This document shows positions 25,557-32,155 of a stretch of DNA of 64,000 bases, in pieces (position 1 is the stretch's first letter; each line of letters opens with the position of its first letter). The stretch is taken from the sequence record ON529853.1. The stretch is one strand, 5' to 3'. The notes beneath the pieces are model-generated. The model did not search any database, was not told the origin of the DNA, and saw only the letters and a list, made by a program, of their open reading frames with translations. The translations under genes and the position numbers were made by a program.

Positions 25557-25643
25557 TGGAGGTGCGACCTGGACTCGAACCAGGATGAGGGTTTCCCCTA
25601 CGGCTTATGAGGCCGCTGCCTATTCCAGCCGCGCCACCGCACC
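25557..25643 (-). tRNA. tRNA with CAT anticodon and long variable arm (Met or Ile2 unresolved)
   Basis: Acceptor GGTGCGG/TCGCACC + TCCA; anticodon arm GCGGC-CTCATAA-GCCGT; variable arm AGGG-GAAA-CCCT; T arm CCTGG-TTCGAGT-CCAGG. The D stem is weak. Confidence 0.7.
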
Positions 25644-26339: not shown

Positions 26340-26685
26340 GTAAAGTGGGGAACTTTCTGTTCCAAGGCCCGGCAAGCCGGGGTTCCCCATACCCGTGGTC
26401 GCCCTTAGGCGGCCAGGAGGACTCGTTCGCCAGCGGCGAAGTTGTCGTTGTGTGCTTCGACAGTTGTCAAAGTTGGATCGTGAGCAGCCCGAAGACCACC
26501 ATGCAGACCCTAGCACTCGCCATTCAATCCCGTCACCAACGTCAATCGATACTGTTCGGCCCCTCAAACCGCGCCCGTCTCCCATTATAGGAGGGGGATT
26601 GGTGGAGCCGACGGGATTCGCACCCGTGTCTTGTCCGTCTGTTTCGTTCTCTCTGCTTCGGTCCGAAGACCTCCGCGCGACGAAA
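26340..26685 (-). ncRNA. ssrA: Two-piece (circularly permuted) tmRNA
   Basis: The acceptor piece ends ...CCCGTCGGCTCCACCA at 26600. After an intervening segment the coding piece starts GGGGCCGA at 26563, giving G3:U70. Tag frame 26455-26405 reads AHNDNFAAGERVLLAA*. Outer boundaries are approximate. Confidence 0.9.
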
Positions 26686-26738: not shown

Positions 26739-26825
26739 TGGAGGGACGGGTGAGAATCGAACTCACGCCAGGCTTTCGCCAGGAGGATTTGCAGTCCCCC
26801 GCCTTACCACTCAGTCCACCGTCCC
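26739..26825 (-). tRNA. tRNA-Cys(GCA) with long variable arm
   Basis: GGGACGG/CCGTCCC + TCCA (U73); GGGGA-CTGCAAA-TCCTC; GGC-GAAA-GCC variable arm; GTGAG-TTCGATT-CTCAC. Confidence 0.85.
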
Positions 26826-29064: not shown

Positions 29065-30450
29065 TCAGCCGACGACGTTTCCGTCCGAGAAATCCATCGC
29101 TTCGACTTCCCGGATATAGCGCAGGACGCTCTCCGAGAAGCCGTCGATGTGGACCCACCCGTTGCCGTACCCGACACCATTCTGGTGGCTGGCGACGTTG
29201 ATCATATAGGCCTTGCCGGCCTTAGGCGCCGGCAGTCGTCCTCCGCCCATGGTGCTGCTCAGGGCGCCGTTCGCCTGTTCGTCAGTGATGACGATCAGGC
29301 GGTCGCAGGCGAACTGGCGGTTCACCACGTCCACGGCCTGGGCCAGGGCGGTGCCGTTGTGCGGCTGCGAACGGATCACCGCATCGACCCCCGCCATGCC
29401 CTTGCGGGCCGGCACTTCCACGAGGCCGTTGGAGAAGGTCACGACGCGCACGTCGCCCGGCAGGATCGACGCCAGCGTCGCCGCCGCGTCCATCCGGGTC
29501 AGGTCCGACTTTCCGGACAGCTTGTTCCGCATGGAATAGGAGACGTCGACCATGACCACGGTCGATCCCGTGAAGGGTTCGGCCTGGTTGATCGAGGCCA
29601 CCAGGGCGTCGTCCAGCGCCCGCTCGAACGAGGGCGCATAGCGCGCCGCCGCCGTGAAGCGGAAGGGCAGGACGCGATCCGCGCCCTTGCGCGCCCGGAT
29701 CGCGGCGTTGACCAGATCGCGATCGACGCCGGCCTGCTCCATGTTGCGCAGGTTGCGCAGCAGGGCGAGGTAGCCCAGCTTGCCGTCGGTCAGCAGACGC
29801 GTGAACGTCGCCTTCTTGTCCGCGCCGCCCGACAGGGCGACTTCCCAGGTGTCGGGCGCCGCCAGTTCGTTGTCGACCAGCTTCTTGTAGAGGGTCTCGC
29901 GGTCATCGTTCGCCGGCTTGGCGTGCGCCAGGAACAGGACGTCGCGCAGACGCACCGACTTGGCCCGATCGTATTTGGCGATCTGGTAGGCGTCGAAGTT
30001 GCCGAAGGCCATCGACAGGCCCTTCTTCACCTGGGCCGACAACGGCGCCTTCTTGCCGTTCGAGCGCAGCGGGTTCAGCGCCCAGTAGAGGGCCAGGAAC
30101 TCGCTCAGTTCGTCAGCGCGCTGAATGACGCGCGCGATGGTGAGCGACACCAGGGCCGAACCTGAGCCGCGCTGGGCCAGCACGACGAGCAGCAGAAGGG
30201 GAACGTGACGCAGCTTGGCGTCCTCGCGGGCCTCGACGGCGATCTGGGCGAGGGTCTCGACCGGAACCTCCTTGGCGAGGCTCTGGATACGGTCGGCGAT
30301 CGACACGCCGCTCTCGTAGAAATTGTCTTCCCAGAGCAGGCAGGACATGACCGACCGGCGCAGGGCCTGCGTCTTGGTCATCCGATCGGCCGGCGCGCCT
30401 TCATGAGTTCGCGCGGTGGTCGCTTTGGGCTTTGCGTTGATCGACGCCAT
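29065..30450 (-). CDS. rsr: Ro60/Rsr TROVE-domain RNA-binding protein with C-terminal vWA domain
   Basis: THEGAPA, LRRSVMSCLLWEDNFYESG, KY, TWEVALS, LGYLALLRNLRNM, VLPFRF and MIDAS-like VDVSYSM...ITDEQ. SD AGGAGG upstream. Confidence 0.9.
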   Translation of the reverse strand: MASINAKPKATTARTHEGAPADRMTKTQALRRSVMSCLLWEDNFYESGVSIADRIQSLAKEVPVETLAQIAVEAREDAKLRHVPLLLLVVLAQRGSGSALVSLTIARVIQRADELSEFLALYWALNPLRSNGKKAPLSAQVKKGLSMAFGNFDAYQIAKYDRAKSVRLRDVLFLAHAKPANDDRETLYKKLVDNELAAPDTWEVALSGGADKKATFTRLLTDGKLGYLALLRNLRNMEQAGVDRDLVNAAIRARKGADRVLPFRFTAAARYAPSFERALDDALVASINQAEPFTGSTVVMVDVSYSMRNKLSGKSDLTRMDAAATLASILPGDVRVVTFSNGLVEVPARKGMAGVDAVIRSQPHNGTALAQAVDVVNRQFACDRLIVITDEQANGALSSTMGGGRLPAPKAGKAYMINVASHQNGVGYGNGWVHIDGFSESVLRYIREVEAMDFSDGNVVG

Positions 30451-30483
30451 GATGGGTCCCCTCCTAAGTGTCTGTCGGCAGGA

Positions 30484-30656
30484 TGACCTTGAGGTTGGGG
30501 AGGAAAAGTCGAAAACCCTTTCATACCGGTGCGTCTACCGTTTCCGCCACCCGCGCATTGTGGCGCGCGAGCCAGGACTTGAACCTGGAAGCCCTTGACG
30601 GGCGCCGGTTCCAGACGAAGTATGGGCTCTCTGCGCCATCCCCGACCTCGCGGTCA
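30484..30656 (-). ncRNA. Y-RNA-like element with permuted class II (Leu-like) tRNA domain
   Basis: Terminal stem GAGGTCGGGGA/TCCCCAACCTC; variable arm GCCC-GTCAA-GGGC; T arm CCAGG-TTCAAGT-CCTGG; CTCGCGC-GCCA-caat-GCGCGGG; D region GGTGGCGGAAACGGTAGACGC. Confidence 0.75.
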
Positions 30657-30661
30657 GTGAA

Positions 30662-30812
30662 CTCTCCGGCGCTCTGGTAGGAAGGCGGGGGAACATACGC
30701 AGCCGGATAGCGGGATCGAACCGCGAGACCGGGGGTTTGAATCCCGGCTTATCAACCAGCGATGTAACCGACCGCTTTCACCACCCGCCCACCAACCAGG
30801 GCGCCGGAAAAG
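30662..30812 (-). ncRNA. Y-RNA-like element with T-loop
   Basis: Roughly 25-bp imperfect terminal stem, GTGGTGAAAG motif, T arm GCGG-TTCGATC-CCGC. Confidence 0.65.
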
Positions 30813-30817
30813 CAGAA

Positions 30818-30970
30818 ACATGAAGGCGGTGGGGGAATAAGCGACCCCACTCTTTTTTAGGCGTGCTACCGTTACACCAAACGCCGCTAGGCGACGTTGC
30901 GGAATCGAACCGCTCATCCCGCTCCACATGCGATGAAAGTGACGTCTGTCGCCACCCACCGCCTTCATGC
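30818..30970 (-). ncRNA. YrlA-like Y RNA (permuted tRNA domain)
   Basis: 16-bp terminal stem GCATGAAGGCGGTGGG/CCCACCGCCTTCATGT; GTGGCGACAG motif; T arm; loop-closed acceptor stem AACGTCGC-CTA-GCGGCGTT; D arm GTGT-AACGGTA-GCAC. Confidence 0.75.
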
Positions 30971-30979
30971 TGTTGGTCC

Positions 30980-31155
30980 AGAAGCGTATGGTGGATCGAC
31001 AGGGGAACCGGCGGAAAGGCGCCGTTTGGACTATCGTTCTAACCAACTGAACTACCGCCGCGCCCGAGGGTGCGCCGGGTGGGACTCGAACCCACGACCT
31101 ACAGTGTGCGAAGAATGCCTCTCCTTCACCACCTGTCGACCCGCCATACGCTTCT
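30980..31155 (-). ncRNA. YrlA-like Y RNA (permuted tRNA domain)
   Basis: 24-bp terminal stem; GTGGTGAAGG motif; T arm GTGGG-TTCGAGT-CCCAC; loop-closed acceptor stem; D arm GTTC-AGTTGGTTA-GAAC. Confidence 0.8.
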
Positions 31156-31161
31156 CGACCC

Positions 31162-31307
31162 TGTCCGCGACAGTCCCGAGGACTGACCCCGCAGAGAACC
31201 GGAGTTCTCTTGCGGGGTCAAGTCGTCCGGGAATAGGCGGAACCGAGAGCGGGGCCAAGGCCCCAACGTACCAAAAACGAAGAACTCGGTCCCTGTCGCC
31301 ACGGACA
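31162..31307 (-). ncRNA. Y-RNA-like element without tRNA domain
   Basis: TGTCCG-tgg-CGACAG pairs with CTGTCG-CGGACA. It carries the GTGGCGACAG motif and three internal hairpins, just behind a TTGACA promoter. Confidence 0.55.
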
Positions 31308-31372
31308 ATGACTGTGTGCCCGATCCCGTTCATTGTGTCAACAACGACGACAGAAAAAGTTGGGATTTGCGG

Positions 31373-31407
31373 CAAAAAGAAACCCCCGGATCGCTCCGGG
31401 GGTTTCC
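31373..31407 (-). terminator. Terminator after the repressor-like gene
   Basis: Minus strand GGAAACCCCCGGAG-CGA-TCCGGGGGTTTCTTTTT. Confidence 0.8.
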
Positions 31408-31438
31408 ACGACGTCTGACGTCGGCGGGGGTTCCAGGG

Positions 31439-32155
31439 TCAGACGCCGATCTTGCCCACCACCTTGCCCAGCAGGGTGATGCTCTTGGCGGGGACGTCGC
31501 GGTGTCCGCGACGGTCCTGATCGAAGATGCGGTAGGGGCCGTTGGCGCTGGGGCGGGTGAGGTGGTCGACGCGGACCTCGCCGTCCAGGGCGTAGACGAA
31601 GGTGGCGCCCGTGGGGGTGGGGGTCGCCTCGCGCTGCACGAAGGCCATCTCGCCCGGTTGCAGGTTCTCGGCGAAATCGTCGATCCGGATCAGGGCGAGG
31701 GATTCGGTCGGCACGTCGAACTGGGTTTGCAGCCAGTCGGCGAACATGGGCCAGGCGCGGGCGGCGGTGAAGCCCTTGCGCGGGCCGGCGAACTCGACTT
31801 CTTGCAGGGTGACGAGGTCTTCGATCCCGTCGGCCAGCCATTGCGGCGCGGTTTGCAGCGCCTCGGCGAGGATGTCAGCCTTCTGGGTGCCGAACGCCAG
31901 CCACTCCGGCGAACATTGCAGGGCCTCGGCCAGGGTGACGATCTTCTCGATGTCCGGCAGAACGTCCCCGGTCTCGTACATGCAGTAGGCGGAGCGGGAC
32001 AGGACCTTCCACTCGGCCTGGCGGCGGTTGTAGAATCTGATCTTGGCCGCAACCTCGGCCTGGGACATGTCCAGTTCCATGCGGCGCGACGTCATGCGCT
32101 CCTGCATGGTGGTGGGGTTATCGATCATTCCCTTGAGCGACCCCTTGCGATGCAT
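31439..32155 (-). CDS. XRE-HTH / S24-domain CI-like repressor
   Basis: RRMELDMSQAEVA...YCMYETG..LPDIEKIVTLAEALQCSPEWLAFG HTH, with a degenerate S24-type C-terminus. Start uncertain. Confidence 0.75.
   Translation of the reverse strand: MHRKGSLKGMIDNPTTMQERMTSRRMELDMSQAEVAAKIRFYNRRQAEWKVLSRSAYCMYETGDVLPDIEKIVTLAEALQCSPEWLAFGTQKADILAEALQTAPQWLADGIEDLVTLQEVEFAGPRKGFTAARAWPMFADWLQTQFDVPTESLALIRIDDFAENLQPGEMAFVQREATPTPTGATFVYALDGEVRVDHLTRPSANGPYRIFDQDRRGHRDVPAKSITLLGKVVGKIGV

What the first reader, a model, noticed from the sequence alone, without database searches (positions are those of the whole stretch)
30484..30656. Permuted Leu-like tRNA inside a Y RNA retains an encoded GCCA end
Seen: variable arm, T arm, then CTCGCGC-GCCA, a 4-nt linker (CAAT), GCGCGGG and a Leu-type D region. 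The acceptor stem is a full 7 bp with CCA intact. Inference: RNase P/Z-like cutting in the linker could yield a chargeable two-piece tRNA mimic, like the permuted tmRNA. The CCA may instead be a relic of recent origin from a tRNA-Leu/Ser gene.
Basis: partly seen in the sequence, partly recalled or inferred. Interest (0 to 1): 0.72.

Follow-up and report, generated by a model that had tools for sequence, protein, structure and literature searches.

The report
Phage Y RNA with permuted tRNA
Just upstream of a jumbo phage's Ro60-like gene lies a small RNA of a known class (YrlA-type Y RNA) whose core is a complete tRNA read in circularly shifted order; its built-in CCA tail recurs in a minority of such RNAs far more often than chance, which suggests these few are cut open to expose a tRNA-like end.

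Summary
The window is Brevundimonas phage Bambus. On the minus strand, 30655-30485 is the last of at least five Y-RNA-like modules upstream of a Ro60/Rsr gene. Its core is a complete, circularly permuted class II (Leu-like) tRNA. The 7-bp acceptor stem is closed by G73-CCA-CAAU.

The architecture is already known. YrlA Y RNAs are described as permuted tRNAs. Mycobacterium smegmatis YrlA is cut by RNase P in this loop and receives CCA.

Is the CCA conserved?
- It is lost in the closest distinct relatives (Domovoi group).
- It is kept, in register, in the true orthologues in CcrColossus/CcrPW and in Rhizobium phages whose Rsr is only 37% identical.
- Across 97 distinct acceptor hairpins next to rsr, CCA sits at tRNA positions 74-76 in 10. 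Shuffled loops give 1.2.

The likeliest reading is an RNase P-openable Y RNA subclass, but no RNA data exist. Charging is unsupported: position 73 is G or C, whereas all nine real tRNA-Leu genes examined have A. A recent tRNA-gene origin is also unsupported. This is a new variant of a known kind, of moderate interest.

The parts
29065..30450 (-). rsr: Ro60-like protein gene (TROVE + vWA), 461 aa
   Evidence: Pfam TROVE E 2.6e-12 and VWA_2. Full-length match to Thermus phage phiLo Ro60, PDB 9KOP/9L5Y, E 1.7e-19. GenBank product 'RNA-binding protein' BAMBUS_03890.
30485..30655 (-). Module D (the finding): YrlA-type Y RNA with a permuted class II tRNA core
   Evidence: Sequence read. Consensus fold with compensatory pairs. 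Coordinates.
30636..30655 (-). 5' strand of the Y stem, with the GGAUGGCGCAG motif (a variant of GNCGAA)
   Evidence: Pairs with 30485-30503. Several pairs covary: GC/AU and CG/UA.
30485..30503 (-). 3' strand of the Y stem (CCUCCCCAACCUCAAGGUC)
30591..30603 (-). Long variable arm (4-bp stem, 5-nt loop)
   Evidence: Also present in the Domovoi D, Colossus 5 and Rhizobium phage modules.
30572..30588 (-). T arm CCAGG-UUCAAGU-CCUGG
   Evidence: Three of its 5 pairs covary against Colossus.
30565..30571 (-). 3' acceptor strand (tRNA positions 66-72), CUCGCGC
   Evidence: 7/7 pairs with 30550-30556. Both strands change together in Domovoi, Colossus and the Rhizobium phages.
30561..30564 (-). G73-C74-C75-A76, encoded
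   Evidence: Exact match located. Register fixed by the T arm on one side and U8 on the other.
30557..30560 (-). 4-nt linker CAAU; U at -1 can wobble-pair with G73
   Evidence: column pair 99-111 is C-G in five sequences and G.U in one.
30550..30556 (-). 5' acceptor strand (positions 1-7), GCGCGGG; inferred RNase P site 5' of 30556
   Evidence: The cut itself is an inference from the M. smegmatis precedent.
30531..30547 (-). Leu-type D arm (3-bp stem, loop GAAACGGUAGA)
   Evidence: BLAST hits to the D arms of tRNA-Leu genes in many phages.
30676..30797 (-). Module C: Y frame holding an anticodon-arm-like hairpin plus a T arm (not permuted)
   Evidence: (weak tRNA-Sec-like hit).
30822..30966 (-). 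Module B: YrlA-type, acceptor closed by a 3-nt loop (ACGUCGC-CUA-GCGGCGU)
   Evidence: Orthologue of Colossus module 3 and the L014 proximal module, both of which carry ACCA plus a ~30-nt linker.
30990..31140 (-). Module A: YrlA-type, class I core; acceptor loop begins ACC (ACCCUCGGGC)
   Evidence: Rfam YrlA 32.6 bits at 31011-31123, below the gathering score of 69. Also.
31225..31306 (-). Module 0: Y frame without a tRNA-like core (YrlB-like)
   Evidence: Motifs GUCCGUGGCGACAGG ... UUCCCGGAC, shared with Colossus and L014.
31374..31406 (-). Hairpin plus U-run that ends the upstream HTH gene; the array starts after it
   Evidence: Read. Weak Rfam terminator-like hits. The consensus scan did not report it.

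Best explanation
Module D is a YrlA-class Y RNA: a small RNA bound by the phage's Ro60/Rsr protein.

Its long terminal stem is the Rsr-binding part. Its distal part is a complete class II (tRNA-Leu-derived) cloverleaf in circularly permuted order. The Y stem replaces the anticodon loop. The acceptor stem is closed by G73-CCA-CAAU.

I think the encoded CCA, the short linker and the canonical 7-bp acceptor mark a minority subclass of these RNAs. In this subclass host RNase P opens the loop 5' of G1 (30557|30556, or one nucleotide upstream because U-1 can pair with G73). 3' exonucleases or the CCA-adding enzyme then leave ...GCCA-3' at 30561. The product is a two-piece, Rsr-bound RNA with a free tRNA-like acceptor end, as shown for M. 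smegmatis YrlA.

Shown here: the architecture, the covariation, the genomic context, and the non-random recurrence and deep retention of CCA.

Inferred: Rsr binding, cleavage and trimming.

What the free end is for is unknown. Candidates are protection from exonucleases and recognition by a tRNA-end-binding factor. Aminoacylation is unlikely.
For: Context:
- The module sits in an array directly upstream of a TROVE/vWA gene on the same strand.
- The same layout occurs in 9 related phage genomes, 41 IMG/VR loci and 80 bacterial loci.

Fold:
- ARAGORN accepts the de-permuted sequence as a tRNA.
- 14 of 54 and 19 of 36 consensus pairs are compensatory.

CCA is not chance:
- Among 97 distinct acceptor hairpins, CCA lies at positions 74-76 in 10.
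- At any other loop offset it occurs at most twice.
- Loop shuffling gives a mean of 1.2, and none of 20,000 shuffles reached 10.
- Two further carriers occur in Rhizobium phage TM39.
- All the carriers counted sit inside Y-RNA frames.

Deep retention:
- Bambus D has G-CCA+4 nt, Colossus/PW module 5 has C-CCA+4 nt, and Rhizobium TM39/Y65/TM30 have C-CCA+8-9 nt.
- The CCA aligns in the same columns in all of these, while the acceptor, T, variable and anticodon stems covary.
- Colossus module 3 and L014 both keep ACCA although their 30-nt linkers are unrelated.

Carrier features:
- U at -1 in 7 of 10.
- G at +1 in 8 of 10, against 37 of 87 other hairpins.
- A purine at 73 in 8 of 10.
- From general knowledge, these match the preferences of bacterial RNase P.

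Precedents:
- M. smegmatis YrlA.
- The same phage encodes a permuted tmRNA with a 'CCA + linker + 5' acceptor strand' layout.
- The phage's own tRNA genes encode CCA.
Against: - There is no RNA evidence. The only public runs holding this sequence are low-depth metagenome contigs. One contig spans the loop intact, but it is probably DNA.
- CCA is absent from Domovoi, Papperlapapp and Kabachok (loop CUCUG) and from Colossus module 6. It is therefore dispensable for viable phages.
- N73 pairs with N-1 in every D-type lineage. That favours a closed 8-bp hairpin and, from general knowledge, can shift or hinder RNase P cleavage.
- S. Typhimurium YrlA and D. radiodurans Yrn1 are not cleaved.
- The Rfam YrlA model does not recognise module D at all.
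Confidence: 0.5

Rival explanations
1. It is a closed-loop YrlA. The RNA stays uncut, and the CCA is an inherited remnant of the tandem tRNA-Leu genes from which the module arose (the dimeric-tRNA origin model). On this view it is tolerated, or used only as loop sequence.
For: - Module D aligns to the junction of tandem tRNA-Leu genes in phiCbK-like phages. There CCA is encoded and spacers are 5-11 nt.
- The dimeric-tRNA origin model is published.
- CCA has been lost without obvious cost in sister phages.
- N73 pairs with N-1, which extends the hairpin.
- Most YrlA acceptor stems are closed by tetraloops.
Against: - A neutral remnant should not survive in register across lineages whose Rsr is 37-70% identical while 4-6 of the 7 acceptor pairs, the linker and N73 all change.
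- ACCA is kept between Colossus module 3 and L014 although their linkers are unrelated.
- The module is no closer than about 65-78% to any tRNA-Leu examined, and is not close to the neighbouring tRNA-Leu genes in TM39.
Confidence: 0.3
2. After cutting, the two-piece RNA is aminoacylated by an anticodon-independent synthetase (LeuRS or SerRS) and acts like a charged tRNA or tmRNA.
For: - It has a complete class II body with a long variable arm, a 7-bp acceptor stem and CCA.
- From general knowledge, LeuRS, SerRS and AlaRS do not need the anticodon.
- Chen et al. raised possible aminoacylation of M. smegmatis YrlA.
Against: - Position 73 is G (Bambus) or C (Colossus, Rhizobium phages). All 9 true tRNA-Leu genes examined have A73, which from general knowledge is the main LeuRS determinant.
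- G3-C70 rules out an Ala identity.
- There is no tag reading frame.
- There are no charging data.
Confidence: 0.08
3. The CCA is a chance trinucleotide in an 8-nt loop.
For: Only two near-identical genomes (Bambus and Marchewka) carry this exact loop.
Against: - In-register enrichment: 10 observed against 1.2 expected, reached by none of 20,000 shuffles.
- CCA occupies the same columns in the Colossus and Rhizobium phage orthologues.
Confidence: 0.04
4. It is not a Y RNA but two decayed tandem tRNA genes. This is the known false-positive class for YrlA searches.
For: True tandem tRNA junctions match the same T-arm ... D-arm pattern. Chen et al. warn of this.
Against: - The 3' acceptor strand pairs with the following 5' strand, and the two covary.
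- The flanks form a conserved, covarying Y stem with the Ro-binding-type motif.
- There is no second D arm upstream and no second T arm downstream.
- ARAGORN finds no tRNA.
Confidence: 0.02

Closest known systems
Mycobacterium smegmatis YrlA (Chen et al. 2014, RNA 20:1715; PMC4201824)
   Same: - A Y RNA encoded upstream of rsr.
- T arm, then acceptor hairpin, then D arm.
- A 7-bp acceptor stem.
- The loop is opened by RNase P, the 3' end carries CCA, and both halves stay bound to Rsr.
   Different: - There, only part of the CCA is encoded and CA is added after nibbling. Here the whole N73-CCA is in the genome.
- Here the body is class II, with a long variable arm and an intact anticodon stem.
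- The gene is phage-borne and sits in an array of five modules.
- Processing has not been tested here.
Salmonella Typhimurium YrlA (crystal structure 6CU1; Wang et al. 2018, bioRxiv 10.1101/312249)
   Same: A permuted tRNA-like L-shape joined to the Rsr-binding stem through the anticodon-stem position. The conserved U8, D-loop and T-loop nucleotides are present.
   Different: Salmonella has a 6-bp acceptor stem closed by a loop, no CCA and no cleavage, and a short variable loop. The Rfam model built on such sequences does not score module D.
Two-piece (permuted) tmRNA of alphaproteobacteria; one is encoded in this same window at 26405-26662
   Same: The gene order is T arm, 3' acceptor strand, NCCA, linker, 5' acceptor strand. 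The linker is removed to give two base-paired pieces.
   Different: tmRNA has G3.U70 and A73, is charged with alanine, carries a tag reading frame and works with SmpB. Module D has G3-C70 and G73, no reading frame, and a full D arm, variable arm and Y stem.
Circularly permuted tRNA genes of Cyanidioschyzon merolae (Soma et al. 2007, cited)
   Same: The 3' half precedes the 5' half, and the acceptor end is first a closed loop that RNase P and/or RNase Z open.
   Different: Those become real tRNAs by splicing-type circularisation that restores an anticodon loop. Here there is no anticodon loop, and bacteria have no known enzyme for that step.
mascRNA / MEN-beta tRNA-like RNAs
   Same: tRNA-like RNAs recognised by RNase P. 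From general knowledge, mascRNA also receives CCA. The T arm gives a weak Rfam hit.
   Different: They are eukaryotic, not permuted, and are released from the 3' end of a long RNA.

Membership tests
YrlA-type bacterial/phage Y RNA | Encoded within 4 kb of a Ro60/Rsr orthologue, on the same strand | tested here: met
   The module ends at 30485 and rsr starts at 30450, both on the minus strand.
YrlA-type bacterial/phage Y RNA | T stem-loop lies 5' of the D stem-loop, with an acceptor-like stem-loop between them and a terminal stem at the anticodon position | tested here: met
YrlA-type bacterial/phage Y RNA | GNCGAAN0-1G motif near the 5' end (the presumed Rsr contact) | tested here: inconclusive
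   Module D has GGCGCAG, one mismatch. Sister modules have GGCGACAG, GGUGAAAG and GGUGAAGG. Rhizobium phage modules have UUGCGAAU.
YrlA-type bacterial/phage Y RNA | Conserved tRNA tertiary-contact nucleotides (U8, A14, G18G19, A21, T-loop UUCRA) | tested here: met
   All are present in the sequence. ARAGORN accepts the de-permuted form.
YrlA-type bacterial/phage Y RNA | Scores at or above the gathering threshold of Rfam RF02553 | tested here: not met
   No hit for module D even at E<=10 on 201 nt. Module A scores 32.6 bits against a threshold of 69. The model is built on class I, short-loop YrlAs.
YrlA-type bacterial/phage Y RNA | Bound by Rsr in vivo | not testable with these tools
   Needs immunoprecipitation.
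RNase P-opened YrlA subtype (M. smegmatis type) | Seven-base-pair acceptor stem | tested here: met
   7/7 pairs.
RNase P-opened YrlA subtype (M. smegmatis type) | Cleavage 5' of position 1 and a CCA 3' end on the upstream piece | not testable with these tools
   CCA is encoded. No usable RNA reads exist.
Two-piece tmRNA | G3.U70 with A73, and a tag reading frame | tested here: not met
   G3-C70 and G73. The Rfam tmRNA_permuted model hits only 26405-26662.
Genuine (tandem) tRNA genes | A complete cloverleaf with an anticodon loop in native order | tested here: not met
   ARAGORN and the Rfam tRNA model find nothing in 30470-30670.
tRNA-Leu identity (LeuRS substrate) | A73 discriminator | tested here: not met
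   G73 here and C73 in the Colossus and Rhizobium orthologues. A73 in 9 of 9 real tRNA-Leu genes.

The most novel reading that the evidence does not exclude
Genome-encoded 'N73-CCA + linker' acceptor loops define a conserved subclass of Y RNAs in phages of alphaproteobacteria and in some alphaproteobacteria. These RNAs would be matured into two-piece RNAs with a true tRNA acceptor end. That end would be the functional business end, for example as a decoy or substrate for host enzymes or defence toxins that act on tRNA 3' ends. For the Ala-like members with G3.U70/A73 (Colossus module 3, L014), it could be a substrate for aminoacylation.
Probability: 0.12. Interest if true: 0.8.

Novelty: new variant of a known kind. 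Interest (0 to 1): 0.5.

Why it matters
The function of the tRNA-like domain of bacterial Y RNAs is an open question. The one cleaved, CCA-ended example (M. smegmatis) has been treated as an oddity.

This study adds three points:
- A fully encoded CCA, in exact tRNA register, recurs well beyond chance in rsr-linked Y RNAs.
- It is retained across very distant phage lineages in a Leu-like class II module.
- It flips on and off between close relatives.

That last point supplies natural matched pairs for experiment: Bambus (CCA loop) against Domovoi (closed loop), on the same host genus.

The module also gives unusually literal support to the published idea that YrlA RNAs arose from dimeric tRNA transcripts. 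Here the acceptor stem is made of the two tRNAs' own acceptor strands, and the loop is the discriminator, the CCA and the spacer.

Tried and rejected
- Rfam at gathering and E-value thresholds: no family explains module D.
- Search for a donor tRNA of the acceptor/CCA patch inside the window: none found. BLAST of the module against 50,697 phage records finds no second copy in Bambus, only tRNA-Leu D arms and tandem tRNA-Leu junctions elsewhere.
- Pattern scans for more orthologues. IMG/VR returned nothing, or only CcrColossus/CcrPW plus random coding matches. JGI metagenomes returned only true tandem tRNA junctions. A search with the Rhizobium phage Rsr found no IMG/VR relatives.
- My first alignment paired Bambus D with the rsr-proximal Colossus module 6 and suggested that CCA was not conserved. 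Re-alignment showed that module 5 is the closer homologue (69% against 60%, shared variable arm and anticodon stem) and that it does carry CCA.
- G3.U70 as an alanine-identity signal in Colossus module 3 and L014: the wobble is not enriched overall (10 of 97, like other positions), so I keep it only as a lead.
- RNA evidence: two run searches and one read-laying gave only sparse metagenome contigs.
- Promoter and terminator consensus scan: nothing reported.
- The reviews by Sim & Wolin (2018) and Sim et al. (2020) are not held in the library. The supplementary tables of Chen et al. are not held either.

Full report
**Where the window comes from**

The 2.4-kb stretch searched (29065-31450) is 100% identical to Brevundimonas phage vB_BpoS-Bambus (ON529853.1), a 348-kb jumbo phage of the Dolichocephalovirinae. 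By offset, the window corresponds to roughly 186001-250000 of that record.

The finding lies on the minus strand, directly upstream of ORF 30450-29065. That ORF carries TROVE and vWA domains. It matches the Ro60 homologue of Thermus phage phiLo over its full length (PDB 9KOP, E 1.7e-19). It is therefore an rsr/Ro60 gene.

**Checking the observation**

The minus strand reads, in order:
- variable arm, 30603-30591
- T arm, 30588-30572
- CUCGCGC, 30571-30565
- G73-CCA, 30564-30561
- CAAU, 30560-30557
- GCGCGGG, 30556-50
- U8 and G9
- a Leu-type D arm, 30547-30531

ARAGORN sees no tRNA in the native order. When the two halves are rejoined in tRNA order, it returns a full 88-nt class II cloverleaf. 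The predicted ends are 30556 (G1) and 30561 (A76).

**The surroundings**

The 988-nt gap between the upstream HTH gene and rsr holds at least five modules. All share one frame:
- a 5' strand of the form ...GG(C/U)G(N)A(G)... followed by a (U)ACUUCG-like motif
- a 3' strand of the form ...UUCCCC...

The modules are:
- Module 0 (31306-31225) has no tRNA-like core.
- Module A (31140-30990) is the only one the Rfam YrlA model detects, at 32.6 bits against a gathering score of 69.
- Module B (30966-30822) has a closed acceptor hairpin.
- Module C (30797-30676) carries an anticodon-arm-like hairpin plus a T arm.
- Module D (30655-30485) is the finding.

The same array sits upstream of rsr in eight related Brevundimonas and Caulobacter jumbo phages and in many other phages and bacteria.

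**What is already known**

- Chen et al. 2014 found YrlA RNAs next to Ro60 genes in 254 bacteria and 22 phages. They showed that the core mimics tRNA, with the T arm 5' of the D arm and an acceptor-like hairpin between them. A 2025 paper notes that their list included CcrColossus.
- They also showed that M. smegmatis YrlA, the one with a 7-bp acceptor stem, is cut by RNase P in that loop both in vivo and in vitro. The upstream piece ends in CCA after CA is added, and both pieces co-precipitate with Rsr.
- Wang et al. [quoted passage not shown] They cite the model that these RNAs arose from dimeric tRNA transcripts.

So both the permuted tRNA inside a Y RNA and the idea of cutting the loop are known in kind.

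**Is the CCA conserved?**

My first alignment, built by position, suggested it was not:
- Only Bambus and its 99.5%-identical twin Marchewka have GCCA.
- The 91%-identical Domovoi, Papperlapapp and Kabachok have CCUGCAU-CUCUG-GUGCAGG.

CcrColossus and CcrPW, however, carry one extra rsr-proximal module. The better homologue of Bambus D there is their module 5:
- It is 69% identical, against 60% for module 6.
- It has the same variable arm and the same CCGG/CCGG anticodon stem.
- It reads CUUGAUC-C-CCA-ACAG-GAUCAUG, again N73-CCA plus a 4-nt linker.

In Rhizobium phages RHph_TM39, Y65 and TM30 the Rsr is only 37% identical. Even so, the rsr-proximal module is again a permuted class II Leu-like tRNA, with C73-CCA and an 8-9-nt linker. 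In the joint alignment the CCA falls in the same columns, and 19 of 36 consensus pairs show compensatory changes.

Colossus module 3 and the proximal module of IMG/VR contig L014 form a second example. They have the same T and D arms, and two acceptor pairs covary. Their ~30-nt linkers are unrelated, yet ACCA is kept. Bambus module B, their orthologue, has a closed loop.

The feature is therefore deeply retained in some lineages and lost in others.

**Is it more than chance?**

I scanned 1.5 kb upstream of rsr in 52 phage loci and 80 bacterial loci. I looked for a T arm followed by a 7-nt strand, and a complementary 7-nt strand directly before U8 of a D arm. Both arms therefore fix the register.

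Results:
- There are 97 distinct acceptor hairpins.
- CCA occupies positions 74-76 in 10 of them, and in 9 of the 31 with loops of 7 nt or more.
- At any other loop offset CCA occurs at most twice.
- Shuffling each loop gives a mean of 1.2. None of 20,000 shuffles reached 10.

The bacterial carriers are three Hyphomicrobiaceae loci (L081, L089, L094) and one other alphaproteobacterium (L139, GCCA+UUGU). Every carrier sits in a Y frame, not between real tRNAs.

Carriers have U at -1 in 7 of 10, G at +1 in 8 of 10 (37 of 87 elsewhere) and a purine at 73 in 8 of 10. From general knowledge, these are the preferences of bacterial RNase P. They are also simply typical of tRNA genes.

**Origin**

Module D aligns to the junction of tandem tRNA-Leu genes in phiCbK-like phages, where CCA is encoded and spacers are short. 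This phage's own tRNA genes also encode CCA. That fits the dimeric-tRNA model in a very literal form: the acceptor stem is the two tRNAs' acceptor strands.

The origin is not recent:
- The module is shared by phage groups whose Rsr is 37-70% identical.
- Its halves match the tRNA-Leu genes examined at no more than 25 of 32 and 32 of 49 positions.
- The TM39 module is not close to TM39's own flanking tRNA-Leu genes.

**Mechanism**

Best reading (confidence about 0.5 for the processing step): the module is bound by Rsr through the Y stem. Host RNase P opens it 5' of G1 and the 3' side is trimmed to GCCA. The result is a two-piece RNA held together by the acceptor stem, the D/T-loop contacts and the Y stem.

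The same genome encodes a permuted tmRNA with the same 'CCA + linker' layout. From general knowledge, such genes are matured into two base-paired pieces, so the host presumably processes that layout.

Arguments against:
- CCA is dispensable in sister phages.
- N73 pairs with N-1 in all D-type lineages. That could keep the hairpin closed or shift the cut.
- There are no RNA data.

Charging is unlikely:
- Position 73 is G or C in the three lineages, but A in all 9 real tRNA-Leu genes examined.
- There is no G3.U70.

**Verdict**

The interpretation largely re-derives published YrlA biology.

What is new is modest but concrete:
- a fully encoded CCA in a class II permuted core
- its non-random recurrence and deep retention
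- natural on/off pairs of phages that would make the question testable

Noticed in passing
window 26405-26662 (-): The phage encodes a circularly permuted (two-piece) tmRNA gene: Rfam tmRNA_permuted 57.9 bits against a gathering score of 47. ARAGORN does not report it. Its layout is T arm, CGGCUCC, ACCA, a ~38-nt hairpin linker, then GGGGCCG. This mirrors the CCA-bearing Y modules.
   Followed up: partly
window 25557-25643 (-) and 26739-26825 (-): tRNA-Met(CAU) and tRNA-Cys(GCA) are 87 nt long with long variable arms. These are class II bodies on anticodons that normally belong to class I tRNAs. Both have U73 and an encoded CCA. Related phiCbK-like phages annotate tRNA-Lys genes of 87-90 nt. 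Their charging identity is unclear.
   Followed up: partly
L004:3510-3690 (-) (CcrColossus module 3); L014:2290-2470 (+): An Ala-like permuted tRNA core inside a Y frame. It has G1-C72, G2-C71, G3.U70, A73 and CCA, plus a ~30-nt linker that forms its own hairpin. Acceptor pairs 5 and 6 covary between the two loci, while G3.U70 and ACCA are kept. G3.U70 is not enriched across all modules (10 of 97), so this is only a lead for AlaRS recognition.
   Followed up: partly
L141:560-1600 (+) (Rhizobium phage RHph_TM39; also L148, L149): An array of about seven Y modules upstream of rsr, each starting with GUUGCGA(A/C)U ... (U)UACUUCG. Two carry N73-CCA. Real tRNA-Leu genes flank the array and rsr.
   Followed up: partly
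L003:2395-2537 (-) (Gurke) versus window 30485-30655: The same Y stem (GGUUGGGGAUGGCGCAG ... CCUCCCCAACC) carries a class I core closed by UUUU in Gurke and Kikimora, but the class II CCA core in Bambus. The tRNA-like cores appear to be exchanged between frames.
   Followed up: no
CcrColossus JX100810 109217-109284; Gurke and Kikimora 'tRNA-Ser'; L014:2295-2374: Deposited or ARAGORN tRNA calls (tRNA-Gln, tRNA-Ser(gct), tRNA-Leu(tag)) overlap Y-RNA modules. They are probably false tRNA annotations. ARAGORN finds no tRNA in the CcrColossus locus.
   Followed up: partly
L140:1491-1575 (+) (Microcystis phage Mvi-JY20); L143, L145: A genuine tRNA-Leu(UAG) lies 25 nt upstream of rsr in a cyanophage. 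In Arthrobacter and Streptomyces phages rsr sits inside tRNA gene arrays. The link between Ro60 genes and tRNA genes in phages is tighter than I expected.
   Followed up: no
window 30614-30621 (-) and equivalents in all loci: The motif (A/U)UAC(U/A)UCG, between the Y stem and the tRNA-like core, is invariant or nearly so across Brevundimonas, Caulobacter, Xanthomonas and Rhizobium phages and alphaproteobacterial loci. Its role is unknown.
   Followed up: no
window 31185-31219 (-): A strong 15-bp hairpin (GACCCCGCAGAGAAC ... GUUCUCUGCGGGGUC) lies between module 0 and module A. It has no U-run and its function is unknown.
   Followed up: no
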